IMG/VR virus record: IMGVR_UViG_3300043399_000877
Location: 62,001-126,000 of that record
DNA length: 64,000 bases
Strand: one strand, 5' to 3'
In this document: piece by piece, positions 5,001 through 46,905 of the stretch
Layout: each line of letters begins with the position of its first letter
How positions within the stretch are numbered: the stretch's first letter is position 1
Notes under the pieces: model-generated
The model's input: the letters and a program-made list of their open reading frames with translations, nothing else
Database searches by the model: none
What the model was told of the DNA's origin: nothing
Made by a program: the position numbers and the translations under genes

Positions 5001-5065
5001 ACACAGGCTTGACAAGCACCTTTGTTGACGTTAGTATATGCTAGACCCCGCTGTTGGTATATCAT

Positions 5066-5371
5066 ATGCATAGAAGCTATATCGGAACATTTCGTTACGA
5101 CCCAAACAACTTATGGAAGAAGATGAGTTTGACCTCTCGCGAGGACGTCTTCAGTCGGCTATCTGATGTACAGCAGCGTTGGTTGGAAAACAATGCGCCA
5201 GACTGGAAGTTTTGGCATGACGAATTCCGACGACTGCATTACCATATCTACTCCGAAACTCCGATATCAGACAGTCGTTTGACTATGGCTGGAATGATAT
5301 TCTATCAGGAAATTCCCAGCCATCCGCCGTTGGGTGAAGAAGCATTGTGGGTTGATGTTTTTAAGAGTTAA
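5066..5371 (+). CDS. Hypothetical small early protein
   Basis: Own TTGACA-N17-TAGTAT promoter at 5009-5037; lies between two minus-strand genes. Confidence 0.6.
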   Translation: MHRSYIGTFRYDPNNLWKKMSLTSREDVFSRLSDVQQRWLENNAPDWKFWHDEFRRLHYHIYSETPISDSRLTMAGMIFYQEIPSHPPLGEEALWVDVFKS

Positions 5372-7697
5372 ATGGTTCAACAGTAAAAGCGTCATCGCCA
5401 TATTCGTCAACTGCATCCTGGTAATCCTGTTGCGTTAACGCTTGTCCGAAGTTCAATCCTGTCAGTCCCGGTTCATCAACAATATATTGGTATTGTTTTA
5501 GTACATTGTAAAACAATGGGTCCAAATTTTTAATCCTAGTCGCCCAACTGGGGTTTTTCTGTATGAGTTTTTGTTGAATATTAGTGGGTGCTACTATTGA
5601 TTTTCTGTCATACTTTGCCGGATTCGGATTTGTTTTGAGAATGTAATCTAGCAGATCTGCGGGCTTGAATTTTTCAGGATCGGCTTCCAGTTCGCGGCTG
5701 TAAGCATCGGCATTGCGTATTTTTTCAACTACAGTGAATGCGGCCTTGCTGAAGAATACCGCCTGAGTGGGTTCATTTTCGTGTATGGTTCCGCTATCGA
5801 AATCAACGGCGTAATCATATTTTAGCACATTTCTCATTAACCAGTTCCATGCAACTGGTGTTCTGGAATTTAACTCGAGGTGACGTGCAGCAAACATTCT
5901 GGTGACATTCCATATTTGGCTGGAGAAAGTTTCTTCATATGCTTGTCCGGCATATTGTTCTACTCTAAAATGAAAATCTTTCTCGTCCATGTAATCGCCG
6001 TTTACGAAGAATTTTTCCATCTTCCAAACGTCGAGTTCATAGTCATCTTTGGTATAATAGTTGGAGCCCAACCACATTGCCTTATCTGGATTGTTGGCTT
6101 TTAACACCCATATAAACGGACTCATGCCGGCAAACGGCACAGCCGCGGCGGTCTTGTAGTCATACATATTTTTGTATATTTCTTTGGTCAACGGGTATGT
6201 ATAAATCCCAATAGGAGTGTCAAACTGACTTCTGGGATTAATTCCTATTTTGTCAACTTTTGTATAACTTATGTAGTAGAATTCGTCTTGGTTTACATAC
6301 TTTTCCAGACTGTCCAGCGCATATGACCTAGGATTCTTGTCAGGATTTCTTCTCGCTTCCGGGACAGATTTGGTCGTGTTTTCAGACAATCCAAAATGTC
6401 GTTGATATTCCTTCCAGATATACGGACTCTGTTTTATAGCTGCTTCACCTGCAGGCCACGGTTGTTTCAAAATCTTTTGGGCATACATCATGGCGGGCCA
6501 ACTGTCTTTTGCTATTGCTGGTTCACCCTTTTTAAATCTTTGCTGATTTAGTGAATGAAATGCATATAGATAAGCACTCATGCCATCTTTTGCTATAATG
6601 TCTTCCAAGTGCGGCGCTGGGCCTTTGTAGAATCGGGATGCTAGATCCTGCGCTGCTCTTGCTTCCCTAACTTCGTTGGAGTACAAAGAAACTTTTGGTT
6701 GACTTTTTATAAATGCTGTGTCAAATTCGTCTCGTTTTTTCTCATCTGACATTAAAATAGTTTTTACATCTGAACCGAGATGCTCCCCGGCTTTACGGTA
6801 ATAATACACTAACTCTTTTCCGTCGAGTTTCCAGAGTAAGAAAACAAAGTTGGCTTCAAGTGCCATTTCTTGACGATCTGTGGGGCCTGGGTCGTTGTAA
6901 TAGCCGTCTTCGTCGTCACCGGTTGGATCGCGTTCGGCATAATCTACTACTTCACCCAAAACTTCAAGCATGTTGTTTTGATTTTTGTCAAACAGCTTGG
7001 CAGTTACCGGATTTTGCTCCATAAAATATCGTGCGTCTTCAACTCCCAGTGGCTGGTCTTGAGAGTCCATAAATTGTCCGCTATCAAAATGGAACTGATA
7101 TTTTTGTTTGCGCTTTTTGTCGTGCCAGATATAAAGTGGACCGTATTTTGTATAATAATTATACATGTTTTTCTTTTCATCGGAGGCCGCCGTACACCAT
7201 TTGGTTCCGCTACCCAATGCACAACTGGCTTCACGAGTCTTGGGAACGGTAAGAATTCCCAGCGGACCGTTGTAAAGCACTTCCGCATCTTTAACTCCGG
7301 CGGCATCTGTATCAGCTGCACCAAGATCGGTATTGCTCAATTTGGCTGCAACATCAGCCAACGATCGCCAATTGTATTGATTTATATCACTATTGATGTT
7401 AAGGCGCTTGTGTTGTCCTTTGGTTTTAACGAATGTTTCGAGATCTGCCCGTAGTTTGTAGATGTCTTCGTATTTGAGCCCGTTCTTTATATATTGACGA
7501 ATTATCCAGACCACATACTGCTTGTTGGCAGTTGGGTCAGCTTCTTCTGCCGCCTGTAGCACTGCCTCCACCGGATCAGCACCCCGACTTTTTAAATATG
7601 CATCGGTCTTTGCCCGGTCAGCAATCGCATTGCTGAAGTTTGCAAGTGTTTTTGATCTGTCATATTCTAGGATTGTTTTGATTTCTTTATATCTCAT
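5361..7697 (-). CDS. Large late/virion-type paralog: N-terminal SCxLGxGTxWC domain, helical repeats, and an uninterrupted ART-like scaffold
   Basis: 788-aa ORF; probable start MRYKEIKTILE at 7697, after TGATAAATA (7718-7726). Contains YISYTKVDKIGINPRSQFDTPIGIYTYPL...KYDYAVDFDSGTIHENEPTQAVFFS. Confidence 0.85.
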   Translation of the reverse strand: MRYKEIKTILEYDRSKTLANFSNAIADRAKTDAYLKSRGADPVEAVLQAAEEADPTANKQYVVWIIRQYIKNGLKYEDIYKLRADLETFVKTKGQHKRLNINSDINQYNWRSLADVAAKLSNTDLGAADTDAAGVKDAEVLYNGPLGILTVPKTREASCALGSGTKWCTAASDEKKNMYNYYTKYGPLYIWHDKKRKQKYQFHFDSGQFMDSQDQPLGVEDARYFMEQNPVTAKLFDKNQNNMLEVLGEVVDYAERDPTGDDEDGYYNDPGPTDRQEMALEANFVFLLWKLDGKELVYYYRKAGEHLGSDVKTILMSDEKKRDEFDTAFIKSQPKVSLYSNEVREARAAQDLASRFYKGPAPHLEDIIAKDGMSAYLYAFHSLNQQRFKKGEPAIAKDSWPAMMYAQKILKQPWPAGEAAIKQSPYIWKEYQRHFGLSENTTKSVPEARRNPDKNPRSYALDSLEKYVNQDEFYYISYTKVDKIGINPRSQFDTPIGIYTYPLTKEIYKNMYDYKTAAAVPFAGMSPFIWVLKANNPDKAMWLGSNYYTKDDYELDVWKMEKFFVNGDYMDEKDFHFRVEQYAGQAYEETFSSQIWNVTRMFAARHLELNSRTPVAWNWLMRNVLKYDYAVDFDSGTIHENEPTQAVFFSKAAFTVVEKIRNADAYSRELEADPEKFKPADLLDYILKTNPNPAKYDRKSIVAPTNIQQKLIQKNPSWATRIKNLDPLFYNVLKQYQYIVDEPGLTGLNFGQALTQQDYQDAVDEYGDDAFTVEPFNS

Positions 7698-7777
7698 ACT
7701 AACTAAGTCCTTTGGTATATTTATCAACAGACTGTTGACATGCTGGACAGCTGACTATATAGTATGCGGGAATAGGG

Positions 7778-10469
7778 GTGAACATGTCTAAGTTTCAATT
7801 TGACAATGTAACGAAAACAACCAACATGGGCAGTCTAGGATTCAGATATGCCTTAACCGGTTGGTGTCTTAGAGATGAATACTTGGAGAAGATAAACATT
7901 CTTCGCGAGGTATTCGGTGAACCCAATCGTCGTCATCAGTTCGGTGGCATACAAAGATACGGACTCTGGTTGAGGGGCGGAAACGACCAGTTGGCGCGGT
8001 GGTTTGTGGGTCCGCGTAAATGGACTTCGCCACCGGGTAAAAATCGAGACCTCTACACTTTTGCATTTCGTTCAGAACGAGACAGACTACTGGCGAGCAT
8101 GATGATATGAAACGTCCTCAAACTGAAATCAGACCCATGGTGCGTATCGGCGCCGTAGACGCTGGCACTCGGTTTGCGAGCTATGTTTATAACGGTCGCA
8201 CCGGTGAAGCCCGAAAGGAGATCATGGCATCACTTACTGAAGCACAACGGGCTTGGCTTAAAGTTCGTCCCTGGGAGGCCCGTGTGGTTTCAGGAAATGG
8301 TACCAATGCGGTAATTTATGCTCGTATGGGGAAATACGGAAACTTTGAACGTGAAGAACTGATAGCACGGATATTGTTTAATGGATAAACGAATCGGATC
8401 CGGTCCCAGGCCGGTAACCACAATCTGGGTCACGAATTACTCGCTAATGCCGTGTCTGGATGTCTTGAGTCATTATATGACACAGAGCGAGCATGAGTTT
8501 ATAAGAAAAAGACCGAACCGTGTGATTCAGTCTGAAAGAACTTTGGTGCGGATTGACGAAACGAGTGGTGTGCAACACCAATACTTTTTGTATGATATCT
8601 GGATGGACCTGACACAACACGAAATCACCCTGGTTGCCCTAAAGTTTGGGTGGCGGGTTCCGTCATGACAAAACTGCTATTAGCACAACCAATAGCAGTT
8701 GAACAAGTATCGCTCCAGCAGCAATTAGGTTGGCTCGATCATAATCATTCATCGGATATTTACTGATGACTCTCGAAGTTGTACCTTTATCCGAACGTTT
8801 AGCATTGTGTGCGAAATGATATACGAATACAAAAACTGCCAGTATATGAATGGTCGGGTAAATCGGAAACGAATTAGAGACTTCTATGACCCCGCTGTTG
8901 AGTTTACAAGTCACAGCTATCATCCGATCTGGGGTAAAGAGTCTAAACATTTCATAATAATTAACTTTGCCAGCGAGTATCATCAACAAATATTCGAGCT
9001 AGAGTTTGGCAGAGCTGATCTAACCGAACTTGACGCTATTCCGGATATGGAGGCAGTAGGTAACTATGGATAAAGACCCCGCTGTTAGTTGTAAATTCTC
9101 TCGTGAAACATTTCATATACGCGATGGACTAACTCTACCGCAAATGAACTATCTACGCAAATACATCAATCGCGGATTGGTGCATGTTGAATATTCGTTT
9201 GGCAGATCCAGAGGTAGAAACATTTACAGTGCTGACCGAGTATACATAGTAAGTGTAGACCCCGCTGTTGGGGAAGTTGTTTTAACTGCAATACGACTTT
9301 TGTTGAGTGAGAACCTATTATGAAAGACCCCGCTGCTGACTGGAGGGAGAGTGTAATCGTTCCAAAAAGGCGTCGTATTATGTTTAGGTTGAAGGCGCCA
9401 TTTAACCGATTTCAAACCGACTTCGTACATCAGCGTATGAAACGTCTTGATTATGATCAGCATCCCCTGGCATCTGGTGGTTATGTTCTGGCATTTTGGC
9501 GGCCGCTTTCAGATCAGGAATTAACCACTCTCATGCTTTTACTGGCTGATACGATAACAGACATACTATATCCGGAAAATGCGAATGAGCCCGAAAACCC
9601 TTAAAGTAGCATATCGTACCAATACAGTATTGCCGATGCTTCTTAGCGGGCCTGCCCTCCGTGACTGGGTCATAGATACTGCAAAACCGGAACAACTGAG
9701 ATTTTTGAATAGAACTGATTGGATCGTTATATACGATTATACTGATCGATCAGCATACTTGCTTATTGATGTATTTTCCGAAAAACAAGCCACACTGGCA
9801 AATATATATTTCGGTTAAAACGCAGATAGCTGTTGACTTCACTACTGTTAGAGCATACTGTTAAGGTGTCGCTGAGCAGGGGCAGAAGATGTATCATTAT
9901 GGAACCATTCATCCCTTGCCAAAAGGGATAACCGTAAACCAGAGATTTATCTGTGTTAAGGCCTATAAACGGCTATGGATACAGGATGTGATCTCCGGTT
10001 ATTTGATTTACACCTATCCGGATTTTTTGAGACCCACGGACCGGACTCTCATGACCGAATTGGCTCGGAGGGCGAGTCTTCGCGGTCATTTGGATATTGC
10101 TGACATAATGGTATTCGAAGCCAAAACTCCACGCGCCCCGGGGTATCGTAAAAGACCCCCCGAGCACGAACCAGATTGGGAGCCATTACCATGAGAGTGA
10201 TAAAACTGGATCATCGATATACTATGTCCAAATACGGATTTACTCACGCAATCGAATGGACCAATATAACGAAATTGCGGCCCAATTCCAAGCCCTATAA
10301 AGACTTTTTTCGAATATCAGATATATGTCGATCTCAATTCGGTGAGAGTTGGTATCGATATCTTGGGACTGACGGTCGCTGGAGTGCCCAACGTGAAAAC
10401 GGTCGATCATTTGCCCGCATATACTTCAAAAGCGAGCGGATGATAACAATGGTTCAACTCTTGCTCTAA
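7778..10469 (+). CDS. Run of nine small (80-110 aa) hypothetical genes, most apparently from one divergent paralog family (7778-8110, 8107-8388, 8381-8668, 8807-9073, 9066-9323, 9320-9604, 9585-9818, 9889-10194, 10191-10469)
   Basis: Overlapping start/stop junctions; promoters at 7735 and 9833. Most share a C-terminal F-x-S-E-x(2-3)-T-hydrophobic-helix motif. Confidence 0.7.
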
Positions 10470-10525
10470 TCCTGCTTGACACGGGCGGCCGTGTATAGTA
10501 GTCAGGGGGCAGGAGGACAGGCAGC

Positions 10526-11000
10526 ATGGGCTATCAGCTAACAGACGAGCAGACGCGACGTGTCGCCGAGGGTGTGTTCAAATCCCTTTATTGGGATGAG
10601 TTCACCGGTGATCGTGATCGTTCTCCCTATGAGCCCTATACGGTTGAGGAATGCCGTGCGGGGGCCGAAGAACGACTCGACTGGATTCATAGCCATTGCA
10701 AGGATGGGTTCGGCGAACTGGAATCGTTCGCCAACTTTTTCTATGCTGCTGCTGACTATGATCGGGTAACCGATATGTGCAATGAAATGCTGAAACAAAA
10801 CTGGAAATGGGGATAACATGACCGAGCTCGTTGTTGAAAAAGTATCGCAAGTCGATCTTGAACCCACCTGGGAAGAAATCGAGATCCATGCTCACGATGA
10901 GGCGGTTTGGCAATCTCTGGAGTTCGACAGTCATTCCGACTGGGTTAACTTTTGCTGCATGATCGAAAACAACATGCGCCGCGAACGCGGCCTGATTTAA
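10526..11000 (+). CDS. Two small acidic hypothetical proteins (10526-10816, 10818-11000)
   Basis: Promoter at 10476; AGGAGG SD. Confidence 0.7.
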
Positions 11001-11067
11001 CCGAAAGACTGTTTGACAATGCTGACGCCAGCACATATAACTGGTGGACAAGACGAGGAGCAACGTC

Positions 11068-13362: not shown

Positions 13363-13374
13363 CGCCCGCCATTT

Positions 13375-13451: not shown

Positions 13452-13455
13452 AAAT

Positions 13456-13623: not shown

Positions 13624-13626
13624 TTC

Positions 13627-16692: not shown

Positions 16693-17922
16693 ATGAAGAC
16701 ATACTTAGTAGGTGGGGCTGTCAGAGACATGCTGATGGGCATGGACCCCAAAGATCGTGACTATGTGGTGGTGGGCGCATCGGCTGCACAGATGATTGCC
16801 GATGGTTTTGAGCGCGTGGGCGCAGAGTTTCCGGTGTTCCTGCATCCCGGAACCGGCGAGGAATATGCGCTGGCAAGAACCGAGCGCAAGACCGGTTCCG
16901 GCTACACGGGCTTCTCGACGGAGTTCGGTCCAGACGTGACGCTGGAGCAAGACCTGGCGCGGCGTGACCTGACCATCAACAGCATTGCCTATGACGTGTC
17001 CGGTTACGGCGGATATATCGATCCGTTCGGTGGCGAAGATGACATCCGGAATCGTATGCTGCGGCATACTTCGGATGCCTTCGCAGAAGATCCGGTTCGT
17101 GTGCTGCGGCTGGCGCGTTTTCGTGCCAGACTGGGGCCGACCTGGGTCATTGCACCCGAGACAGTTGAACTGATCTCCAAGATGGCCAAGAGCGGTGTGC
17201 TGACAGAGCTGACTGCTGAACGCGTCTGGAAGGAAATGAGCCGAGCGCTGATGGAACCGTATGCGCGTCTGTTCTTCGATACGCTGATGGAGACCGATTC
17301 GCTGCATGTGATCTTTCCGGAAGTGTATCGACTGAAGACTGCTCTGGAAGCGCGTCGTTGGCATCCGGAAGGTGACGCTTACGAGCATACCATGCTGGTG
17401 CTGTCGCAGGCTGTGGAGTTTGGATTCGATCTCGAGACTCGTATGGCTGCACTGGTTCACGATTTCGGCAAGGCAGCAACTCCGCGAGATCGGTTGCCCC
17501 GACATCACGGGCACGAGGTCACAGGTGTTCCGATTGTTGAAAACTTCTGCAAGCGGCTGCGGGTGCCCAGCACCATGCAGACCAGACTGCCGCGAGTGAC
17601 CAGATACCATATGCACATGCATCGTCTGGATGAGCTGAAATCGTCTACCGTTGTTGACATGTTCGAACGGATGGACGCCTTCCGGGATCTTCCGGTAGTC
17701 ACTCTGCTGTGGCAACTGGCTATCTGCGACGAGCGTGGCAGACTGGGTTCGGAGAATGCCGAGTTCGGACAGCTGTCCCAGATCCTTTACATGCAAGACG
17801 CAGCCCGTTCTGTTCGGTTTGTGGACGTGTTCCCTAGCGGTGAACCGGATCACACAAAAATCCGATCCGGTATGCACCGAGTCCGTGTGGCGGCTGTCCA
17901 AAATCAACGAAACTCCAAATAA
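16693..17922 (+). CDS. cca: Multifunctional CCA-adding tRNA nucleotidyltransferase with HD domain
   Basis: YLVGGAVRD, DRDYVV, EYALARTERK, DLARRDLTIN, EDPVRVLR, HPEGD..EH, LVHDFGK. Confidence 0.95.
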   Translation: MKTYLVGGAVRDMLMGMDPKDRDYVVVGASAAQMIADGFERVGAEFPVFLHPGTGEEYALARTERKTGSGYTGFSTEFGPDVTLEQDLARRDLTINSIAYDVSGYGGYIDPFGGEDDIRNRMLRHTSDAFAEDPVRVLRLARFRARLGPTWVIAPETVELISKMAKSGVLTELTAERVWKEMSRALMEPYARLFFDTLMETDSLHVIFPEVYRLKTALEARRWHPEGDAYEHTMLVLSQAVEFGFDLETRMAALVHDFGKAATPRDRLPRHHGHEVTGVPIVENFCKRLRVPSTMQTRLPRVTRYHMHMHRLDELKSSTVVDMFERMDAFRDLPVVTLLWQLAICDERGRLGSENAEFGQLSQILYMQDAARSVRFVDVFPSGEPDHTKIRSGMHRVRVAAVQNQRNSK

Positions 17923-25628: not shown

Positions 25629-26219
25629 ATGCCGAATTGGTGCTCCAACTCCCTCTATGTCACCGGCCCGACCCAGGTGATCAAAGACATGGCCGCTGCC
25701 GCCGAGAAGGGCGAGCTGCTGCAATTCGTATGTCCGGTTCCGCAGGAACTGACTGACACGGTGTCCGGCAGTTTCGGCGACACCGAAAAGCAGGCGGCGC
25801 TGGAAGCGAAACAATCCGCCAATGTGGAAAAATATGGCTACGCCACCTGGTATGACTTCTGCGTCAACGAGTGGGGCACCAAGTGGGACATCGGTGGCGA
25901 AGACTGTCATATGGAAGTCACTGATGTGGGTGACGGTTCCGGCAACAGCACCCTGAAGATCAGCTTCGACAGCGCCTGGGCCCCGCCGATTGCGGCCTAC
26001 GAGAAGATGGAGGGCCTGGGTCTTGAGGTTCGCGCCTTCTACTACGAACCCGGCATGGCGTTCTGCGGTCAGTTCTTCGAAGGCGAAGACGCTTACTGGA
26101 ACATCACCGGCAACAGTGACTGGGTTTCGGAAAACATCCCAGACGAAATCGACACTGAAATGAACATCAGCGAGTCGATGGCTGAATGGGAAACGGACGA
26201 AGAAACCGACGAAGCCTAA
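25629..26219 (+). CDS. DUF1281/YubB-like ferredoxin-fold protein
   Basis: MPNWCSN, WYDFCVNEWGTKWD, FDSAWAPP, YYEPGMAFCG. Confidence 0.75.
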   Translation: MPNWCSNSLYVTGPTQVIKDMAAAAEKGELLQFVCPVPQELTDTVSGSFGDTEKQAALEAKQSANVEKYGYATWYDFCVNEWGTKWDIGGEDCHMEVTDVGDGSGNSTLKISFDSAWAPPIAAYEKMEGLGLEVRAFYYEPGMAFCGQFFEGEDAYWNITGNSDWVSENIPDEIDTEMNISESMAEWETDEETDEA

Positions 26220-26948: not shown

Positions 26949-27171
26949 CCGACAAAGCCGTTGACACGGCCAGGAAGACTTGCTAGACAAGGCAAGTAAA
27001 CAGAAACGCTAACGGTTCAACAGAGGATACGATGCCCCGACCTCGAGACTCGCCCTAGCCGGGCATGCCAGAGACGCCCTGGAATAATTAGATAAAATTT
27101 TAGATTGATGGAGGTCCTGGGTATGACCGCCGCTTAAAAACTGCCCAACCCTCGCAACAAGGAGCCAAATA

Positions 27172-27222
27172 TGGGAACCAGGTCAATGATCGGTGTCCGC
27201 AACACGGACGGAACCATCACCA
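27172..27222 (+). pseudogene. Truncated 5' copy of gene 27977..28432
   Basis: AAGGAG SD followed by MGTRSMIGVRNTDGTIT, versus MGTRGMIGIKNADGTID in the intact copy. Confidence 0.8.
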
Positions 27223-27888
27223 TTTGACTTTACCGCGACCCTGAATAAAATCCGGTCCCGGTTGATTAACGCTCCGTATGCACTGAACTCCGTTGTTCCA
27301 CCATTTTAGTTTGGAAACACCTTCCGAGTTCTTTTTTCGCCAGTCAGCATCTTGATTGATGCCTTTGTTTATACCTACAATTTCCCCAGTATTCCATCTT
27401 GGATCATTTGGTGATACTTTTATTTTTTCACCTGTTGATACTAGCTTTGCTGGTATTGAAGTAAATTCCGGATTGCGATTTTGTTTGCGTCCCTTTTGTG
27501 ATGGTGGAGATATTCCTAAAAGCAAATTTCGATCTCTTACTTTTTGTTTTGCTTCTTCATTCCATCCCCTATTTCCGTCACCACCGTCTGTTTGGTTTGT
27601 TAGGACGCCGGTCCCCAAATCCCGTCTACCATAAGTCGATATAAGTTCTATCTCAAGGCCAGTGGCTTGTTCACGAGTAAGGTTGTTGTGAACTATCTCG
27701 ATTAAAGGATCTTTTCCTTCTTCTAATAGTTTTCGAATTGCGTTGAGTTTGTGTTGGCCCGACTCGGGAATTGGATTTAGTTTTGCCTCTTTTAAGTGAG
27801 CAAATCGACGACGACCTTTACCCATTCCTACATAAAAGGGTTCTAGCGTGTCAGGGTTTCGATATAGGTATGTATAATAATTGTTCAT
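27217..27888 (-). mobile_element. GIY-YIG family homing endonuclease gene
   Basis: YYTYLYRNP..PFYVGMGKGRRRFAH..EIELISTYGR..LTNQTDGGDG and C-terminal KWWNNG motif. AT-rich, opposite strand to neighbours, with a GATAAATAC promoter just upstream. Confidence 0.85.
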
Positions 27889-27976
27889 ATTGTATTTATC
27901 GAACAATTATTTTTCGGATGGCTACTTGACAATAGGCGCTGGTTGCGCTATACACTAGGAAACAAAGGAGACACAC

Positions 27977-28432
27977 ATGGGAACGCGCGGAATGATTGGC
28001 ATCAAGAATGCCGATGGAACCATCGATGCGATTTATTGTCATTGGGACTCGTATCCGGAACACAATGGTCGTATCCTGAGCGAACACTACCAGGACGAAT
28101 CCAAAGTTCGTGAACTAATCGGTCTCGGCGACATCAGCTCGCTGCGTGAAGAGATCGGTGAACAGCATCCCTTCGACACCTACCACCTGAAAAAAGAAGA
28201 TATGGATCCCAGATGGGATCGCTGGACCGTAGCATACGGTCGTGACCGAGGCGAGACCGGCATTGAAGCCAAGAACTACCACAACGAAACCTTCTTTGTG
28301 GGCGGGGCTAAATCGTGCGGTGCCGAATACGCATACCTTTTCGATAATGGCGAGTGGGGCGTGGTTGGAATCGGAATCCCGCGCCGGCCCACGTTCAGCA
28401 AACTCGAAGCGGTTCTTCAAGACAGTGATTGA
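27977..28432 (+). CDS. Conserved phage hypothetical protein (MGTR...YCHWDSYP family)
   Basis: Promoter at 27926 and SD; distant paralog of 19207..19650. Confidence 0.8.
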   Translation: MGTRGMIGIKNADGTIDAIYCHWDSYPEHNGRILSEHYQDESKVRELIGLGDISSLREEIGEQHPFDTYHLKKEDMDPRWDRWTVAYGRDRGETGIEAKNYHNETFFVGGAKSCGAEYAYLFDNGEWGVVGIGIPRRPTFSKLEAVLQDSD

Positions 28433-33558: not shown

Positions 33559-36500
33559 GCGAACTGGGCCAGTGGCAACCGATCAGCCGGGTGCGGGCTC
33601 GGGGCCGGGCCCAGTATGAACTACTGTTCATCGACAGACGGAATCAGATCTGCACCATGACCGTCACCGGCCGGGAACTCACCGAACTCAGCCCGGAGAT
33701 CGAACCGGTAGCTGCGCGACTGACCGAACCGGCACCGGCCGCGGTCCAGTGGCTGGGCACCGTGCTGTGGGATTATGTGCGGGGCCGGGTGGTGCGACAA
33801 GCCCGGCCGGCGGATCCGGTGGTGTGGGCTGACATCGGCTGCACCCCGGCGGGAGAACCCCGCATACGATACCGACCCCGAACCGGAGAACAAAAGTGAA
33901 GCACCCGCAGATCGCTATACCCATCACCGTCCAGGTGTCATCCAGCATATACCGGGAAGTGGCCGAAAGCATCCTGGAAGACCAACCCCTGGACCACGAA
34001 CTGTTGAACACCGACTGGGACACCATGTGTGACCGTCTGGCAGCCGGGGCAGAATTCCAGCGAACGGTTCAGGAACACATCCGGGATCGACTGAACACGG
34101 ACTGGCGCCCGGAGGTCTGGGATTTCATAGACGTGGGCGAGTTGGAACAGATCGCACTCAGTGACCGCATGACCGAAACCGCCTGGCTGACCGAAGCCAT
34201 CGCGTTGAGCGAACAGCACTGGGAGGCGGTGGAACACCAGCGCCGGCTCTTGCAGGAAGCCGAGGCCGAGGAACGAATCACCAGCCAGCGAGCGATAAAT
34301 CAGCATCTGGTGGAACAATTGCGCGCCCAAGGCTATGTGGTCTACGAGAAACCCCGGAGGCGAAAGAAACGATGAAGCGATTAAAAAAAATTGCCGAGAT
34401 TGAACCGCGCACGGCACCACCGGTATACCGAAGACGGCCGGGACAGAGTCCGCAACTGGTTCGGTGGTTGACTGAAACCGAACTGTCCGCCGCCCAACAA
34501 CGCATAGCAGAACGATATCGGGATCATCTGGTAGCACGTTTGCACCCGCGCTGGGCACTGGTGGAACTATACATAGACCCCGCTGTTGTTCCGGAATCGG
34601 AATGGACCATCATTAACATACTGTTCAAACAATGATCTACACTCCACCCATCCGAATCTATCGGAGAAATGATCCGATCTCCGAACCGCAACTCCAGCAA
34701 TTGCGGACCATTCTGGGCCGTCAGAGCCGGGCGGCGGGAGTGATTAGCCAAGAACAATACGGCAACGACTTACAGTATTGGGTGGTGATATTCAATTGGC
34801 ATCTCGTAGAGGAGTCACGTCAATTGATGGTTGAACAGATAATAGACCCCGCTGCTGGCCGACCTCAACGGCCGGTGGATCTCCAAAGTTGGATTCGTTC
34901 ATATATAAAATTTTGTGATAAGATTGGTGGGTCTACAACTGACGACGATTTTAGATCGATGATGGAGTCCGAGCGTCAACGCTGGAGCACGATTCTCAGT
35001 CGAGTAAAGAAATTTGAAAAAATAACGTCAGAGTCCATACTTTAAAGGAAAGCGGTCGGAATGCTATACACAACCAGTGAAAATCACCAATACAGACCGG
35101 GCGCGGGTCCGGTTCCCAAAAAATGGATAGAAACAGATCAGAGCCCGGAGGACGCCATACTGGACTATCTAGAACGTCGAGTAAGAGTCTGGGATGCAGA
35201 TCGTGCCGGTGACCGGACTGTGGACTTCCGGTTCGAGGACGGATCGGACTGGCGTCTACACTATGACTGGAGTGTAAATGATACCGGCTGGTATACTGAT
35301 GAGTCGGGTGAACAACCGTGGATAGTGGACGAATACCGTATAGAACGGATCAGTCCAGAACAGAGCCAGATCCGGGATCGAACACCCGGACGTGACTGGA
35401 TGTAACCGACGGTGACTGACCGGCGGGGAACCACTGACGGAGTATCGGAAAACCCCGGAAAGATCCGAAAACCATTGAAGGAGTATTTGACTATGCCTGT
35501 GGTTCGTCCGGTCTTCATTTCTGGCAGAAACCCACAGCGTCCGCTGGTGCGTAGGCTGTCCACCGGTCTGACCGGCAGATCCGGTGTGGCGTCCGTCACA
35601 CACCCGAGATGAATTTCGTATTTCAGCCTATTTATACTTGACATCCTGTGATGTTGGACAGCCTGTCTAGCAGCCCTAGAAAACTTTGTCTAACGGTGAA
35701 AAACCACTAGACATGCCGGCCTGGGTCGTGTATACGTGACGACATGACGTAACACACGGCAGAGGAGATACACCGTGGAACATGAAAAGGAAATTCGTGA
35801 GGCCATCCAGGCCATCGGCCGTGCGTGTGACCGTGCCGTGGAGAGCTTCGACCGTATGACTGCCGAAGGCGGCATGGCCGTGGCGCTGGAAGCGGCCGAA
35901 GATGTGTCGGCCATCGGCGTTCGGTATCAGCGCCTGCACGAGATCCTTCAGGCTCAGGCTGCTCGCTCGATCGAACGCATCCTGAACGAGCTGGGGATCC
36001 GGGACCAGCAGTCGGACCGGGAACTGGAGGCCGATGGGAATGTGGTGACCTTCCCGGGTCGGCTCAACTAAGACCCCGCTGCTGGGTATCTGACCGTATC
36101 GATCTCTAACCCCGCTGCTGGTGTTTTTGCTATTGACACTGGCGCGGGGGCCTGCTATAACAGTCGGGTAATGCAAGGGAGCAACTGACATGGACTATGA
36201 GACTGCGCGACGTGTATTCGGTTCGCTGGCTGGCGGAACGTTCGTGGGTATCGATACGCTCACCGATGTTAAGCTCACCGGTGGCCGGTCGAACCCGCAA
36301 CAGGGTCGCGTCCGTAAACGGATGACCGGTGCCCAGGTGATGGTGTTCAGCAACCTTCAGACCAATGCCTATGAGGCGATGGTGCGCCGCCGTCTGGCCG
36401 AAGAAGGACGTGATCCGGATTCGTTTGAATTGGGGCCCAGGGCCTGGGGCACTCGCGTCGCCGGCACGCCGTTCGTGGAGCACCGTGGCCAGTATTATCT

Positions 36501-36699
36501 GGAAACCATTTTCCTCCGAGCGGGATCGGTCCAGTATGAACTGGATGGTGAACCGATTGATCCCGAAGACATTCAGGGACTGCCCGAACGTCGCGAATCG
36601 GAGGCGGGTCAGGCCGGACTGGAACGTCGGGTGGTGATCCGGACTTTTGCGCTGGACTCGATCATCGGATTGCGAGCGCACGGGGTGCAATGGCCCTGA
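33555..36699 (+). CDS. Seven hypothetical proteins (33555-33899, 33896-34375, 34372-34635, 34632-35045, 35061-35405, 35775-36071, 36190-36699)
   Basis: Overlapping junctions, SDs and promoters. Confidence 0.65.
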
Positions 36700-37066: not shown

Positions 37067-37603
37067 ATGAGCGTTAACAATAACTTTTCGGTCGTCGGCG
37101 TGTCGCGTCAGTTCGGCAAACTGAAGATCCGTATGGCGAACGACCGTGCGTGGCGTGAGTTCATGCTGACCAAAGAGGGTCACGTGGATATCCAGCTGCT
37201 GGACCTCGGCACTGTGATGCCCAAGGAACGGGCGATCGAGCTGGCGATGGCTGCAACTGCCATCCAGGAGGACGGCTCGCTGGCGCCGGTGTTTGGCGAA
37301 GAAGCGCAGGAGGTGTTCCGCGCTTACTTGATCAGCAAGGGCATCATCGAGCGCCCGAAGCGCAAGCGCGGCCGCCCGGCGAAGGCTGCTGACGAGCCCG
37401 TGACGAGCGAGGCTGAGGCGCCCCAGCAGGAGCCCGTGGCTGAGCTGCCCGAGCAGGAGACGCCCGCTGAAGAGCCCGCAGCGCCGGCGCTGACCGTGGA
37501 CGACATGCCCAAACGCGACGAGAAAGGCCGGCTGCTGAGCCGTGCGGCGCGTGAGGCGCTGCTGGCGGAGCGGCTGGGGGTGACGGAGGGGGAGGTGGCG
37601 TAA
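37067..37603 (+). CDS. AT-hook DNA-binding protein with acidic/Pro-rich tail, paralog A
   Basis: PKRKRGRPAK; aligns with 37992..38426. Confidence 0.8.
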   Translation: MSVNNNFSVVGVSRQFGKLKIRMANDRAWREFMLTKEGHVDIQLLDLGTVMPKERAIELAMAATAIQEDGSLAPVFGEEAQEVFRAYLISKGIIERPKRKRGRPAKAADEPVTSEAEAPQQEPVAELPEQETPAEEPAAPALTVDDMPKRDEKGRLLSRAAREALLAERLGVTEGEVA

Positions 37604-37991: not shown

Positions 37992-38426
37992 ATGACCAAG
38001 ATTTACAACGCCGCCGGTGTTTCCCGTGTCCGTGCTGACCAGCCGTTCAAGCTGCGTATGGCCACCGACATCGAATGGCGCCGGTTCGACCTGGCCCGCG
38101 GGCAGCACGTGGATGTGACGCTGGTCACGCTGCCCGAGTCGATGGACAAGATCCAGGCTGTCCAGTTCCTGCAGACGGCGCCGGAGTTTGTGGACAACGC
38201 CGAAGCGCAGGCCGTGTTCACTGCCTACTTGATGAGCAAGGGCGTGATCGAAAAGCCCAAGAAGAAGCGCGGCCGCCCGGCCAAGGCGAAGGTGGAGGAG
38301 GCTGCTGGCACCGAGGCGCCGGCTGCTGACGGGCTCGGCGACGAGCTGGTTGACGCTGCTGCCGAGACGCCGGCCGTGCAGGCGGTGGTGGAAGAGAACA
38401 CCGCCGAGTTCGAGCCCGAGCACTGA
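37992..38426 (+). CDS. AT-hook DNA-binding protein with acidic tail, paralog B
   Basis: PKKKRGRPAK; shares GVSR..K.RMA.D..WR.F.L...HVD...EAQ.VF.AYL.SKG.IE with paralog A. Confidence 0.8.
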   Translation: MTKIYNAAGVSRVRADQPFKLRMATDIEWRRFDLARGQHVDVTLVTLPESMDKIQAVQFLQTAPEFVDNAEAQAVFTAYLMSKGVIEKPKKKRGRPAKAKVEEAAGTEAPAADGLGDELVDAAAETPAVQAVVEENTAEFEPEH

Positions 38427-43306: not shown

Positions 43307-43395
43307 AGCGACTTTCCGCTTACTCACCCAACTAACTGTTGACATACAGGCTGAGGCTGCTATAAGTAACATACAACGACAAAAGGAGAAAACCA

Positions 43396-44016
43396 ATGAA
43401 GATGCGAACCATCCTCGGCGGTGTTGCTTCCTCAGCCGTGATTGGTGCTATGGCAGTGATTTACATAACGGCGGGCGAAGAGGCATACGCCGCCATAGAC
43501 CCAACAGAACTGATGATCCCGAGCCCGACTTATGATAGCGAGCGAATGATCGCCCTAGAGCCCGAGCTCACCAGTTCTGTTGCAACAATCCGACCGAGGC
43601 CGCGACCCGTAGGACTGGAGCGTCTGCCAGAATCGGCGAACAACCAGGACGAACAATACTGCCTAGCGCAGAACATCTATTTCGAAGCACGAGGCGAGGG
43701 CAGAATTGGCCAGGAGGCCGTTGCATGGGTCACGCTCAATCGCGTAATGGACCCGCGCTGGCCGGACACGATCTGCCGGGTCGTGTGGCAGGATAACCAG
43801 TTTAGCTGGACACACGACGGGCGGGGCGACACGCCGCGCGCCGGTGACATGTGGGATCAGGCCCGGGCGATTGCTGCACGAGTGACCGCCGAATACAATC
43901 CGGATCTCGATCCCACCGAAGGCAGTGTAATGTTTCACGCTGACTATGTCAACCCCGAATGGGAAGACAACTTCGTTCGGGTAGTGCAGATTGATGCTCA
44001 CATTTTTTACAGATAG
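43396..44016 (+). CDS. SleB/Hydrolase_2 family cell wall hydrolase with N-terminal membrane anchor
   Basis: CLAQNIYFEARGE..VAWVTLNRV..WPDTICRVVWQ..QFSW..FHADYVNPEW..HIFY. Confidence 0.9.
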   Translation: MKMRTILGGVASSAVIGAMAVIYITAGEEAYAAIDPTELMIPSPTYDSERMIALEPELTSSVATIRPRPRPVGLERLPESANNQDEQYCLAQNIYFEARGEGRIGQEAVAWVTLNRVMDPRWPDTICRVVWQDNQFSWTHDGRGDTPRAGDMWDQARAIAARVTAEYNPDLDPTEGSVMFHADYVNPEWEDNFVRVVQIDAHIFYR

Positions 44017-44072
44017 TGATTGACACACACCTCCCGTCTTGTTATACGATACTGGCAAGACGGGAGATACAC

Positions 44073-45089
44073 AATGCGGCGCGAAACGATCCAGAATTTG
44101 TTGATTGCTGCCATCGAAGACGACGACGTCGAGACGGCCGAAGAGTGGCAGGCCATGCTGGACCTGATGGACGCGAACGGTTGGCTGGTGATAGAAGTTT
44201 GAAATAACTGTTGACACGGGCAGGACTGTCTGCTATAACACTGGCAACAAGGAGCAAACGATATGAAATACGCGATGATTTTGGCCACCCTGCTGCTGTC
44301 GGCTTGCGCGGACACTCCGCGACTCACCAGCCCGGCGGAGGCGCTGGCTGACCGTGCAGCACACGATGCCTACCTGGCCGGCAAGTATGATCCCGAACTC
44401 GTGGCTGACTGCGCCTACTATGATCTGGAGGAATGCTGATGAACATCGCACAAATGGTCCGTGACTTCAGCATCGCCATTCTGGCCATGCTGGTGGTGAT
44501 GTTGCTGCTGTGGGCCCGCTGGTACCCGGCGGAATACGGCCGCTGGCTGCAACAGATCGACACTGCCCGGTTCGAGATGCTGGACTGCGACTGCACCGAA
44601 CCGCTGGAGTAAGACCCCGCTGTTGGGTGTGGCACGGACCGACTGTTGGTGCCCCGCCCGCAAAGATCACGACGGCAGGCTGCGACAACGAAATAGAGCT
44701 TGACGCTGTGACACGGGACTGCTATAACACTGGCAACAGACACGGACACCACCGGACACTGACGGTGGACCGGAGCGGGCCGACACGGAGGACAGGACGT
44801 GAACCAGACAACTGAACAGAAAGATACGGCAGAGGCCGAGGCGGCGCAATACCGCTGGTTGACGGTGAGCGGAATACTCCGCACCGGCGGCGACTGGGTC
44901 ACTATCTTCGAGCAGCGGACTGACCGCCCGCTGACCCCGGAGGAAGTGACGGCTGCCCGAGGTGAACTGCGGCCGCTGCTGGAATCCGTCAGCGAAAGTT
45001 TTCGAGACGATCGGCAGGCGACGCTGACCTTCGACAGTGTTCGAGTTCATGTGCAGAGCTGGGCTGCGATCCGTATCGAATTGAGATAA
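44073..45089 (+). CDS. Small hypothetical genes including a small lipoprotein (LLLSAC) and 44799-45089
   Basis: Promoters at 44020, 44211 and 44700; SDs. Confidence 0.6.
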
Positions 45090-45473
45090 CATACCGGGAA
45101 CCGATCCCGATACAGAACCTCCGTCACTGCGGGTTTGCTCCCCCCGGGCGACGGAGTGTCGGTGCTGGTGGTGTGTTGCGTTGATTGTGTTGGGTGCGTT
45201 TGCTCCCGCGCCCCGCGCTGTCCGCCGCCACCAGCACCCATTTTTTTCAGTGCCAGCCGCGCCGTCTCCAGTCGCCACCGCCGCCGTCTCCAGTCGCGCC
45301 ATCAAACGCCACCAGTCATTCAACGCCATAGCACACAACATGCACACCAATACGGCAGTTTGTCAAGTAACGATTTGTTACAAAGCACGTTTCAAACTGT
45401 AACATTTTGTTACTTGACGTGCGCTGCACAGACTGCTATAAACAGCTTGTAAGCAACGCAGAGGAGCAACTGC

Positions 45474-45677
45474 ATGTATAACAGTTTTTACGTTGTTGTG
45501 CGTAACGCTGCAAACAAGCGCAGCGTTGTAGGGCAGGACTGTGGAACGCTTGAGTATGCAACGCTGATGGCGGTAGCAGAGCGCAAGCGCACGGGGCGTG
45601 AGGTGTGGGTGCGCGAATACGAGCAAGAGGGCGTGTTTGGCAAGCGCAAGCTGCTGAGGGAACATGCAGTAGCATAA
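45474..45677 (+). CDS. Small proline-free protein in the TC/CC-free island
   Basis: Promoter at 45414; GAGGAG SD. Confidence 0.75.
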   Translation: MYNSFYVVVRNAANKRSVVGQDCGTLEYATLMAVAERKRTGREVWVREYEQEGVFGKRKLLREHAVA

Positions 45678-45772
45678 CACAGAAAAAACGGCAATGCAAG
45701 CGCATTTTGTGCTTGCATTGTGCTGCGCATAGTGCTATAAACAGTTTGTAAGCAACGCAGAGGAGCAACGCA

Positions 45773-46060
45773 ATGCAATACGCTACTGTTTACAAACACA
45801 AAAACAACGCAATTTACAACGTAAACGCTGTTGTAAAATACAAATACGACGAGAGCGACGTGCTGCGTGTGCTTGTGCGCAAAGAGCGTGTGTATGTTGT
45901 GTGCTGCGGGGAGCTGGGGGAAATTACAAGCAAGTGTGCAAACTTGCTGCGCGTGTTTGCAAAAGTGCTTGCTGCACTTGGGCTGCACAACTGCAAACAG
46001 TTGCATACGGGCAACTACGGGACAAAAGACGGGGGAACGTTTGTAGTTTTTGCACGTTAA
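45773..46060 (+). CDS. Small proline-free protein in the TC/CC-free island
   Basis: TTGCAT-N17-TATAAA promoter; GAGGAG SD. Confidence 0.75.
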   Translation: MQYATVYKHKNNAIYNVNAVVKYKYDESDVLRVLVRKERVYVVCCGELGEITSKCANLLRVFAKVLAALGLHNCKQLHTGNYGTKDGGTFVVFAR

Positions 46061-46148
46061 AAAAAATGCAGTGCAAGTGCATTTTGTGCTTGCACTGCGT
46101 CGCATAAACTGCTATACACGACTTGTAAGCAAATAGAGGAGCAACTAA

Positions 46149-46352
46149 ATGCTTAACATGCGTAAACGTATTGCTGCTGCACATGCGCGCTATGCGCAAA
46201 AACAAGAGCAAAGCGCACAATTGCGCGCTGCAATTGCAACAGGGGGCAGCTATGCGCTGTGGCGTGCTGCAATTGCAGAGGAGGACGCTGCAAAGCAACG
46301 GCTGCAACGGCTGTATGCTGAGGCAGGCTATGCTGACGCGGTTGTAGACTAA
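46149..46352 (+). CDS. Small proline-free helical protein in the TC/CC-free island
   Basis: TTGCAC-N17-TATACA promoter; GAGGAG SD. Confidence 0.75.
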   Translation: MLNMRKRIAAAHARYAQKQEQSAQLRAAIATGGSYALWRAAIAEEDAAKQRLQRLYAEAGYADAVVD

Positions 46353-46457
46353 CACAAAAACAAATGCAGTGCAAGCGCATTTTGTGCTTGCACTGTGTTG
46401 TGCAGTGTGCTATAAGTAAGTGACCGGGGGCAGACCCCGCTGCCCAGGAGAGACCGG

Positions 46458-46838
46458 ATGACCAGAATTCGCCGCACCAGCCACACCAACGGTGGCACAC
46501 GACACACAACCACCCTCACCAGCACGGGCAGGCTGACGCAGAGCACCAGCCAGCGCACCGGCACCGGGCGCATCACACACACTGTGGACAACGAAGGTCG
46601 CAGCTATACAACCCGCACAACCCGTTTCGCTGACGGCAGTTGGGAACGGGAACGCCTGGGTGCGAAGACCCCGGTGCAGAACGGGCGCAGAAACACCCGG
46701 GGTCTCCAGGGTGTGTCCCGGGACTGGACTGCGCCGGAGCGGACGGGTGGGCCCAGCGACACAGCCTTGCAGGTGCTGGGTTGGATTGGCATCGTATTTG
46801 TGGTGCTGTGGGTGCTGGGACTGCTGCTGGGTGCTTAG
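46458..46838 (+). CDS. Thr/Arg-rich protein with a C-terminal transmembrane helix
   Basis: Promoter at 46388; AGGAG SD; hydrophobic C-terminus. Confidence 0.65.
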   Translation: MTRIRRTSHTNGGTRHTTTLTSTGRLTQSTSQRTGTGRITHTVDNEGRSYTTRTTRFADGSWERERLGAKTPVQNGRRNTRGLQGVSRDWTAPERTGGPSDTALQVLGWIGIVFVVLWVLGLLLGA

Positions 46839-46905
46839 GGAAAGACCCCGGTGCTGCCCACCAGTGAGAGAAGAACAGGACAGAACAGACACGGCAGATA
46901 GGCGG

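What the first reader, a model, noticed from the sequence alone, without database searches (positions are those of the whole stretch)
5044..46856. Polar dispersed motif GACCCCGCTG(T/C)TG, found only on the plus strand
Seen: the exact 10-mer GACCCCGCTG occurs at 5044, 8888, 9075, 9258, 9326, 34576, 34845, 36072, 44613 and 46433, with variants at 36108, 46667 and 46844. About 0.1 copies are expected by chance, and I saw no reverse-complement copy (scan by eye). It occurs both between genes and inside six coding positions, always read as D-P-A-V/A with the same DPA codons, so selection is on the nucleic acid. Copies cluster near 9 kb, 34.5-36.1 kb and 44.6-46.9 kb. Inference: an oriented signal such as a Chi-like recombination site, a translocation/injection signal, or an RNA-level antitermination or processing site.
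Basis: partly seen in the sequence, partly recalled or inferred. Interest (0 to 1): 0.75.

Follow-up and report, generated by a model that had tools for sequence, protein, structure and literature searches.

The report
Conserved one-strand 12-mer in jumbo phages
A 12-letter DNA word, A-GACCCCGCTG-C/T, recurs on one strand of the early-gene region of this uncultured 382-kb phage and stays letter-perfect in distant relatives, so it is a real functional signal, but which molecule reads it is unknown.

Summary
GACCCCGCTG occurs 10 times on the plus strand of the window and never on the minus strand. Shuffles and Markov models of order 0-5 expect 0.05-0.14 copies.

- **Full signal:** 12 nt, A-GACCCCGCTG-Y, with no conserved flanks and no shared RNA fold.
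- **Setting:** the window is part of a 381,886-bp metagenomic jumbo phage. The copies sit in and just left of its high-GC early block (rIIA/rIIB, about 100 small genes).
- **Relatives:** the same word, on the same strand as the early block, occurs in at least ten related uncultured phage contigs (GC 32-57%). It is dispersed at gene boundaries or forms tandem arrays in non-coding hubs at the head of the block.
- **Conservation:** syntenic copies stay perfect while their flanks diverge. A side lineage uses GGCCCCGCTG.
- **Absent:** cultured relatives (PA5oct, Atu_ph07) lack it.
- **Reading frame:** copies inside same-strand genes are read Asp-Pro-Ala in 14-15 of 16 cases. This is unexplained.
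- **Mosaic joints:** several homology breakpoints between relatives fall at the motif.

A host Chi site, a sigma-70 or MotA-type promoter, an RNA structure and a protein repeat are rejected or disfavoured. My best reading (0.38) is a strand-specific DNA site for a clade-conserved phage protein. An RNA-level signal is nearly as likely (0.30).

The parts
5043..5054 (+). Motif copy (cta-GACCCCGCTG-t) between two minus-strand genes. It sits exactly at the predicted start site of the plus-strand promoter 5009-5037.
5009..5037 (+). Sigma-70-like promoter TTGACA-17-TAGTAT firing rightwards, antisense to the 788-aa gene, with the motif at about +1. A terminator-like hairpin lies at 5532-5555.
   Evidence: association inferred
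8887..8898 (+). Motif copy inside ORF 8807-9073, read D-P-A-V.
9074..9085 (+). Motif copy at codons 4-7 of ORF 9066-9323 (M-D-K-D-P-A-V).
9257..9268 (+). Motif copy 21 codons before the stop of ORF 9066-9323. Contigs of three other metagenomes end 3-34 nt from it.
9325..9336 (+). Motif copy at codons 3-6 of ORF 9320-9604 (M-K-D-P-A-A; ATGA overlap with the previous gene).
34575..34586 (+). Motif copy 19 codons before the stop of ORF 34372-34635. The same place is kept in L378 (coding) and L379 (intergenic).
34844..34855 (+). Motif copy 18 nt after the ATG at 34827, which has a good ribosome-binding site. The same place is kept in L378 and L379.
36071..36082 (+). First copy of a tandem pair, directly after the TAA of ORF 35775-36071.
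36107..36118 (+). Second copy of the pair (variant AACCCCGCTG), 36 nt after the first and 15 nt upstream of the -35 box of the promoter of gene 36190-36699. The pair is kept in L378. In L379 the second copy lies inside the promoter spacer.
44612..44623 (+). Motif copy directly after the stop codon of a small membrane-protein gene downstream of the endolysin. The place is kept in L378 (as a 40-nt tandem pair) and in L379.
46432..46443 (+). Motif copy in the leader of gene 46458-46838, 16 nt after the -10 box and 3 nt before the ribosome-binding site AGGAGA.
46666..46677 (+). Probable variant copy GACCCCGGTG with A...C flanks, inside ORF 46458-46838 but not in frame 0.
   Evidence: membership uncertain
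46843..46854 (+). Probable variant copy GACCCCGGTG with A...C flanks, 5 nt after the stop of ORF 46458-46838.
   Evidence: membership uncertain

Best explanation
A-GACCCCGCTG-Y is a strand-specific recognition site on the DNA for a protein conserved in this clade of uncultured jumbo phages. Single and paired copies mark gene and module boundaries of the early region. In other lineages, arrays of 3-8 copies sit in a non-coding hub at the head of that region, next to lineage-specific short repeats spaced 10-11 nt apart (origin-iteron-like).

The word is the only sequence that stays identical between otherwise diverged modules, so it also acts as a crossover point when related phages recombine. 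All copies in a region point the same way for one of two reasons.

Shown: the motif exists, is enriched, is polar, is conserved across lineages and at syntenic places, sits at boundaries, and coincides with some homology breaks.
For: - **Enrichment and polarity:**
- **One-strand counts in relatives:** L002 3/0; G001 9/0, G002 12/0, G003 5/0, G004 2/0; G007 4/0, G008 3/0; L378 5/0, L379 4/0.
- **Reader is not host-specific:** the word is invariant across carriers of 32-57% GC, while the closest cultured relatives lack it. PA5oct sub-words occur at chance level. This points to a clade-specific, phage-encoded reader.
- **Lineage variant:** GGCCCCGCTG replaces the word in L380 and L381.
- **Independent of local gene strand:** G001:25009 and 29668 lie inside minus-strand genes. 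G002:60725, 62950, 64508 and 64747 lie between minus-strand genes. One of these sits in the leader of a minus-strand promoter. Window copy 5044 lies between minus-strand genes.
- **Hubs look like DNA elements:** arrays lie in 0.7-1.7-kb non-coding hubs together with 10-11-nt-periodic repeats (G007, G008, G003, L203/L212). In G007 seven DnaA boxes lie within 120 bp.
- **No shared RNA fold** and no Rfam family.
- **Homology breaks at the motif:** (X8 contig 20).
- **Position relative to promoters is not fixed:** upstream of -35, inside the spacer, at +1, at +10.
Against: - No reader protein was identified.
- The window itself has no non-coding hub, and its copies are dispersed over 42 kb.
- In all ten sources tested, the motif is on the same strand as the conserved early genes. 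An RNA-level signal explains this more simply.
- The reading-frame lock of coding copies has no obvious DNA-level reason.
- Some copies form the 5' arm of terminator-like hairpins, which is meaningful only in RNA (window 9260-9273; L200 and L201).
- The origin reading of the hubs rests on resemblance only.
Confidence: 0.38

Rival explanations
1. RNA-level or co-transcriptional signal. The word is read on early transcripts, or on the exposed non-template strand, by a conserved factor. It punctuates the early region as a processing, termination/antitermination or translational-control site. Arrays would be leaders or decoy RNAs.
For: - The motif is co-oriented with the conserved early genes in 10 of 10 sources, even where the block is rearranged relative to DnaB in G008.
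- Copies sit just after stop codons, in leaders 2-25 nt before start codons, or within the first 7 codons.
- Coding copies are frame-locked.
- The predicted start of promoter 5009-5037 coincides with the motif.
- Terminator-like hairpins use the motif as their 5' arm.
Against: - In G001 and G002, about half the copies lie in minus-strand gene territory with only weak plus-strand promoters nearby.
- In G007 the array lies between divergent consensus promoters. In other lineages arrays lie upstream of the first strong rightward promoter.
- There is no shared RNA structure.
- The distance to stop codons shifts by 1 nt between relatives, so coupling to translation termination is not conserved.
Confidence: 0.3
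2. The primary function is recombination. The word is the target of a site-specific recombinase, or of a nicking or homing-type nuclease, that moves gene cassettes in the plastic early region.
For: - Copies are confined to the hypervariable segment between conserved blocks.
- Homology between G001 and G002 starts 3 nt and 17 nt before a motif. G002 carries 3.4 kb of extra genes bounded on the right by a motif.
- An X8 contig diverges 4 nt after motif 5044.
- All copies are direct repeats.
Against: - Most syntenic copies are stable, with homologous DNA on both sides.
- No recombinase is shared by the carriers. The small GIY-YIG gene next to the arrays in five lineages is absent from G000-G003 and G008.
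- The HNH gene is found only in the window and in L002.
Confidence: 0.12
3. Strand-specific nick sites in virion DNA, as in phages T5, tf and phiKMV-like phages (comparison from my own knowledge of those phages).
For: The word is a dispersed consensus on one strand only, with about a dozen copies per genome.
Against: Tandem copies 21-45 nt apart and arrays of up to 8 copies would be odd for nicks. No nickase is shared. Only assembled contigs were available, so nicks could not be seen.
Confidence: 0.07
4. A host-directed polar signal: a Chi site for the host RecBCD/AddAB, a KOPS-like signal, or an injection or packaging signal.
For: The polarity. The 3' part in the window (GCTGTTGG, GCTGCTGG) is one mismatch from the E. 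coli Chi sequence GCTGGTGG (Chi sequence from my own knowledge).
Against: The invariant part is the 5' GACCCCGCTG, not the Chi-like tail, which differs in other lineages (GCTGTAA, GCTGTGA). The word is invariant across carriers of 32-57% GC. Twelve nt is too long for Chi. The host is unknown, and the scan of bacterial genomes found only unrelated repeats.
Confidence: 0.04
5. Not a nucleic-acid signal: a protein motif (D-P-A-V) or a composition artefact of the high-GC island.
For: Six coding copies encode D-P-A.
Against: The codons are identical. There are intergenic copies. Perfect copies occur in AT-rich non-coding DNA of relatives with 32-41% GC. Markov expectation is 0.05-0.14.
Confidence: 0.01

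Closest known systems
Promoter-early stem-loop (PeSL) cassettes at module junctions of T4-type phages (from my own knowledge: Arbiol et al. 2010, Genome Biol Evol)
   Same: Short repeated non-coding elements flank small genes in the hyperplastic early region of T4-related phages, all in one orientation, and coincide with mosaic junctions.
   Different: PeSLs are an early promoter plus a stem-loop and differ between phages. This word has neither a promoter nor a hairpin, is 12 nt long, and is letter-perfect across distant lineages.
Iterons of replication origins (plasmids, lambda ori, T4 oriE; from my own knowledge)
   Same: In G008, L203 and L212 the copies are direct repeats 21-23 nt apart in a non-coding region that also holds other phased repeats. 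In G007 that region also holds DnaA boxes.
   Different: In the window the copies are spread over 42 kb, many inside genes. Iterons normally co-vary with their initiator between lineages, whereas this word does not. The lineage-specific 10-11-nt repeats behave more like iterons.
ops and nut/boxA-type polar transcription signals (RfaH, N/Nus; from my own knowledge)
   Same: A 12-nt asymmetric word co-oriented with long multi-gene transcription units. Some copies lie just downstream of promoters.
   Different: There is no sequence similarity to ops (GGCGGTAGNNTG) or boxA. Most copies are not in leaders. Arrays lie upstream of promoters, and some copies lie in opposite-strand gene territory.
Chi and KOPS (polar dispersed chromosomal words; from my own knowledge)
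   Same: Over-represented, strand-polar, and dispersed. Chi is also a recombination hotspot.
   Different: Those are host-specific 5-8-mers spread over a whole chromosome and flip strand at the origin. This is a 12-mer confined to one region of about 45 kb and invariant across phages of very different GC content.
Consensus nick sites of T5, tf and phiKMV-like phages (from my own knowledge)
   Same: A consensus of 9-19 nt on one strand only, with a handful to a dozen copies per genome.
   Different: Nicks are not known to occur in tandem arrays. No physical evidence for nicks is available here.

Membership tests
Chi site | Recognised by the host RecBCD/AddAB, so the sequence is host-specific and 5-8 nt long. 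| tested here: not met
   The conserved unit is 12 nt and identical in carriers of 32-57% GC. The Chi-like tail GCTGYTGG is the non-conserved part.
Chi site | Over-represented and skewed in the host chromosome. | not testable with these tools
   The host is unknown. The tandem-pattern scan of bacterial genomes gave only unrelated repeats.
Sigma-70 promoter or T4 MotA-box middle promoter | A -10 element (TAnnnT) at a fixed distance downstream of the box. | tested here: not met
   No information content at +11 to +39 in 45 aligned copies. Only 10 of 45 copies lie within -110..+30 of a sigma-70-like start, against 9-17% of positions by chance.
Promoter of a phage-encoded RNA polymerase | The phage encodes its own polymerase or sigma factor. 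| tested here: inconclusive
   There are no Pfam hits for sigma-70 region 2 or beta-prime in the genome. The search for a T7-like polymerase returned nothing, but its control genomes also returned nothing, so it is uninformative. The cultured relative PA5oct relies on host polymerase (PMC7318152). Divergent polymerases could escape Pfam.
ops element (RfaH) | Consensus GGCGGTAGNNTG in the transcribed leader of long operons, plus a NusG/RfaH-like factor. | tested here: not met
   The sequence differs and most copies are not in leaders. The only KOW hit, in the 887-aa protein, is below the Pfam cut-off.
Origin iterons | Clustered direct repeats with helical phasing in a non-coding origin region. 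| tested here: inconclusive
   Met in relatives G008 (21 nt), L203 (23 nt) and L212 (22 nt). Not met in the window, where copies are dispersed and partly coding. Origin activity was not tested.
Strand-specific nick site | A physical single-strand break at the consensus in virion DNA. | not testable with these tools
   Only assembled contigs of metagenomes were available.
PeSL module-boundary cassette | An early promoter followed by a stem-loop that flanks small genes. | tested here: not met
   There is no promoter and no shared hairpin. The boundary position and coincidence with mosaic joints are shared.
Structured RNA family (Rfam) | Match to a covariance model, or a shared fold. | tested here: not met
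   Only the three tRNAs matched. Folds of 12 sites have z-scores from -1.3 to +1.5 with no common structure.
Protein sequence repeat | Conservation at the amino-acid level with free codon choice, and coding copies only. | tested here: not met
   Codons are identical and many copies are intergenic. Unrelated T-P-L and collagen-like coding repeats that contain the 10-mer were recognised and set aside.

The most novel reading that the evidence does not exclude
The word is the address of an undescribed phage machine shared by a large clade of uncultured jumbo phages. One possibility is a phage-autonomous Chi-like or cassette-exchange system that drives the mosaicism of the early region. Another is a translation-coupled reader, which would explain why coding copies are locked to one reading frame. 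The GACCCC/GGCCCC variants would mark co-evolving reader lineages.
Probability: 0.25. Interest if true: 0.8.

Novelty: new variant of a known kind. Interest (0 to 1): 0.62.

Why it matters
Early regions of large phages are the least understood and most mosaic parts of their genomes. This 12-letter word survives unchanged while everything around it diverges. That gives a concrete experimental handle for fishing out the unknown reader protein. It could also show how these regions are regulated, replicated or shuffled, and it can be used to recognise members of this uncultured clade in metagenomes. The frame lock of coding copies is unusual for a nucleic-acid signal. If it is real, it points to an interaction between the signal and translation that has no textbook precedent.

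Tried and rejected
- **Protein queries in IMG/VR:** single-protein scans with the rIIA-like and 887-aa proteins found nothing.
- **15-mer scan of IMG/VR:** gave mostly chance hits, but it revealed the first carriers.
- **Literature search for the string:** returned only primers.
- **Reader candidates rejected:**
  - The small GIY-YIG protein next to the arrays is absent from G000-G003 and G008.
  - The HNH protein occurs only in the window and L002.
  - The most widespread early protein (window 25629-26219, DUF1281-like) is very acidic, so it is unlikely to bind nucleic acid.
- **T7-type primase idea:** the complement 5'-GGGGTC would be a primase start site. The GGCCCC lineage variant weakens this.
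- **tRNA 3'-end remnant or attachment site:** rejected because the upstream T-loop letters are not conserved.
- **CRISPR-repeat mimic:** a hairpin partner exists at only a few sites.
- **Pairing with an antisense RNA:** the three reverse copies in the genome lie inside genes.
- **Analogous word in PA5oct:** none found.
- **Crude tally of motif strand against ORFs of 90 aa or more:** not usable, because early genes are shorter than the threshold and shadow ORFs intrude.
- **Correction of an earlier reading:** the X8 contig at 9255 ends there. It does not continue with unlike sequence.
Full report
**Observation.** GACCCCGCTG occurs at 5044, 8888, 9075, 9258, 9326, 34576, 34845, 36072, 44613 and 46433. 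All ten copies are on the plus strand and none on the minus strand. Dinucleotide shuffles expect 0.12 copies. Markov models of order 0-5, trained with the copies masked, expect 0.05-0.14 per strand, both for the window and for its high-GC part. The variants at 36108 (AACCCCGCTG) and at 46667 and 46844 (GACCCCGGTG) are present. Aligning 45 copies from this genome and its relatives shows a 12-nt unit. Position -1 is A in 38 of 45 copies, the ten core letters are invariant by construction, and +10 is C or T in 45 of 45. There is no information in the 30 nt on either side.

**Setting.** The window is bases 62,001-126,000 of a single 381,886-bp contig. The contig comes from a freshwater metagenome, is rated complete, and has overlapping ends.
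- Bases 7.7-48.9 kb of the window form a 50-60% GC island in a genome that is otherwise 33-46% GC.
- The island is packed with about 100 small plus-strand genes with strong ribosome-binding sites and many sigma-70-like promoters.
- It holds rIIA and rIIB homologues, a CCA-adding enzyme, three tRNAs and an endolysin.
- To its right lie a DnaB-like helicase and a Toprim primase on the minus strand.
- The nearest cultured phages by helicase identity (about 53%) are PA5oct, Atu_ph07 and Phosso. PA5oct is known to depend on the host RNA polymerase (PMC7318152).
- Genome-wide, the word occurs 10 times on the plus strand, all between 67,044 and 108,433. It occurs 3 times on the minus strand (246,408; 250,281; 340,009), all with A...Y flanks.

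**Relatives.** The word is not private to this genome.
- An ENA contig whose rIIA is only 50% identical has three plus-strand copies.
- IMG/VR records show G001 9/0, G002 12/0, G003 5/0 and G004 2/0, counted as same strand/other strand.
- A scan for tandem pairs found more carriers: G007 (383 kb, 4/0), G008 (328 kb, 3/0), G009, and the loci L198, L200, L201, L203, L205, L209, L212, L215 and L216. The same scan returned many unrelated coding repeats, which I set aside because their flanks and 3-nt periodicity differ.
- Carriers range from 32% to about 57% GC.
- PA5oct, Atu_ph07 and a Vibrio jumbo phage have no copy, and Phosso has one. PA5oct sub-words occur at chance level.
- In all ten sources that hold the most widespread early protein (homologues of window 25629-26219), the motif is on the same strand as that gene. 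This includes G008, where the block lies elsewhere relative to DnaB.
- In G000, G001 and G002 the copies are confined to the hypervariable segment between conserved blocks.

**Two layouts.**
- *Dispersed layout.* In the window, L002, L378, L379 and G001-G003, the copies are single or paired at gene boundaries. They lie directly after stop codons (36072, 44613), 2-25 nt before start codons (46433, G001:68933, G002:86086), within the first seven codons (9075, 9326, 34845), or 7-23 codons before a stop (9258, 34576, L002:3048).
- *Array layout.* In G007, G008, L200, L201, L203, L209, L212 and L216, 2-5 copies spaced 21-45 nt or more apart lie in a 0.7-1.7-kb non-coding hub at the head of the early block. 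They sit 30-1,200 nt upstream of the first strong rightward promoter.
- *What else the hubs hold.* The hubs carry lineage-specific repeats with a 10-11-nt period: TCACACTTT in G007, L198 and L216; CTCAAAG nine times in G008; TTTTGCCACC in G003; TTTTACCA in L203 and L212. In G007 there are also seven DnaA boxes within 120 bp. The window has no such hub.

**Conservation at fixed places.** Contigs that carry orthologues of the 169-aa protein 36190-36699 keep the word at the same places. In L378 (89% protein identity) these correspond to 34576, 34845, the pair 36072/36108, and 44613, which is a 40-nt pair there. In L379 (73%) all four places are kept, but the second copy of the pair is a variant that has moved into the promoter spacer. 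The flanks diverge, in places to near-random identity. The same site is coding in two lineages and intergenic in the third. L380 and L381 (69% and 63%) carry GGCCCCGCTGTTG instead, again on the plus strand only. One copy in L216 is that variant too.

**Frame lock.** Every copy that lies inside a same-strand ORF is read GAC-CCC-GCT. These are the six window copies, genome 340009, L002:3048, the N-terminus of a DPPY methyltransferase in G001/G002, G001:67371, G003:8268, G004:1863 and 5584, and G005:4545. The GGC variant in L381 is in the same frame. There is one exception, genome 246408. Stops in the other frames do not explain this. I estimate a chance probability near 1e-4, which is my own rough calculation. 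Copies after stop codons are not frame-locked between relatives. I leave the frame lock unexplained.

**Independence from local gene strand.** In G001 and G002, two copies lie inside long minus-strand genes, and four to six lie between minus-strand genes. One of them sits in the leader of a strong minus-strand promoter, so the transcript there carries the complement of the word. Window copy 5044 lies between two minus-strand genes, exactly at the predicted start of a plus-strand promoter.

**Mosaic joints.**
- Between G001 and G002, one homology block starts 3 nt before a motif and another starts 17 nt before one. G002 has 3.4 kb of extra genes whose right edge is a motif.
- In another metagenome, a contig matches the window up to 5057, four letters past motif 5044-5053, and then continues for 457 unlike letters.
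- Contigs of three runs end 3-34 nt from motif 9258.
- Most syntenic copies nevertheless have homologous DNA on both sides.

**What it is not.**
- It is not a protein repeat or a composition effect.
- It is not a sigma-70 or MotA-type promoter, because there is no -10 element and only weak proximity to promoters.
- It is not a known or shared RNA structure.
- It is not a host Chi site, given its length, its invariance across hosts, and a non-conserved tail.
- No sigma-70 region 2 or beta-prime gene was found. The search for a T7-like polymerase returned nothing, but so did its control genomes, so it settles nothing.

**Interpretation.** A perfect 12-mer kept across lineages whose proteins are 40-70% identical, with a lineage-specific variant and absence from the next-nearest phages, points to a clade-specific reader that is most likely phage-encoded. 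Whether DNA or RNA is read is not settled.

I give a small edge (0.38) to a DNA site, for four reasons. Copies keep their strand in opposite-strand gene territory. Arrays lie in hubs that look like cis-acting DNA loci and sit upstream of promoters. The distance to promoters is free. There is no RNA fold. Uniform orientation would then reflect either a directional reader or selection against inverted copies of a recombination-prone site.

The RNA or co-transcriptional reading (0.30) explains the universal co-orientation with early genes, the boundary positions and perhaps the frame lock more simply. Recombination as the primary function (0.12), nick sites (0.07) and host-directed signals (0.04) follow.

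**Novelty.** I found no description of this word. It belongs to the general kind of polar, repeated phage control words but matches none of the known families tested. Its invariance, clade-wide spread and frame lock make it worth an experimental follow-up.

Noticed in passing
window 27217-27906 (minus strand); duplicated gene start at 27159-27193 and 27965-27999: An AT-rich insert in the high-GC block encodes a 229-aa GIY-YIG homing-endonuclease-like protein. It is flanked by a duplicated ribosome-binding site and first codons of the neighbouring gene. The first copy is truncated after 19 codons, which looks like a recent homing event.
   Followed up: partly
window 7700-48900: A 41-kb island of 50-60% GC lies in a genome that is otherwise 33-46% GC. 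It carries the early-like block, about 38 sigma-70-like promoters (consensus cTGTTGACAc-N17-tGCTATAA) and a near-invariant ribosome-binding site AAGGAGCAAC. Relatives keep the block at their own, much lower GC.
   Followed up: partly
window 45400-46420: Three to four copies of a 65-72-nt promoter cassette. An inverted repeat (GCAGTGCAAGCGCATTTTGTGCTTGCACTGC) overlaps the -35 box, which looks like a repeated operator-promoter unit.
   Followed up: no
window, 3-4 copies (seen as k-mers): Repeated promoter variant GGTTGACTCCCGGAAGGGAGTCAGCTATA, with a perfect hairpin between the -35 and -10 boxes.
   Followed up: no
window 5009-5560: A strong plus-strand promoter (5009-5037) fires antisense into the 788-aa minus-strand gene, with a terminator-like hairpin at 5532-5555. 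This is a candidate 500-nt antisense or non-coding RNA. The segment 5016-5751 is replaced by diverged sequence of equal length in two other metagenomes.
   Followed up: partly
window 2356-5019 and 5361-7727 (minus strand), plus genome 61345-64359: Three large paralogous proteins (887, 788 and 1004 aa) of unknown function lie just left of the early block. The 887-aa one has a sub-threshold KOW motif. A homologue lies at the same place in G003.
   Followed up: no
window 37067-37603 and 37992-38426: Two paralogous early proteins with an AT-hook motif, which are possible DNA binders. Homologues occur in several carriers.
   Followed up: no
window 43396-44612: A lysis-type cassette lies inside the early-like block: a cell-wall hydrolase (43396-44016), a lipoprotein-signal ORF (44263-44439) and a small membrane protein ending at 44612.
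   Followed up: no
G007 85,700-87,000 (L220); G008 126,750-128,300 (L221); G003 5,560-6,280: Non-coding hubs at the head of the early block look like replication origins. G007 has seven DnaA boxes within 120 bp. The hubs also hold lineage-specific repeats with a 10-11-nt period and many TATATAC-type elements.
   Followed up: partly
genome 156,000-178,000 (outside the window): Hundreds of 9-nt-periodic repeats (CCTTGAAYR, CTACCGGTAAATCC) on one strand, probably giant collagen-like or fibre genes. The same occurs in G003 and G007.
   Followed up: no
genome 8,900-21,100 and 354,000-363,400 (outside the window): ARAGORN finds 42 tRNA genes in the genome, including one read as anticodon CTA (amber-reading) at 17,688-17,762.
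   Followed up: no
L325 (Polynucleobacter MAG contig, 921-970): A 25-nt tandem duplication, TAGACCCCGCTGTTTTGCTCGTATC twice, in a freshwater betaproteobacterial bin. It could be a mis-binned phage contig or a hint to the host.
   Followed up: no
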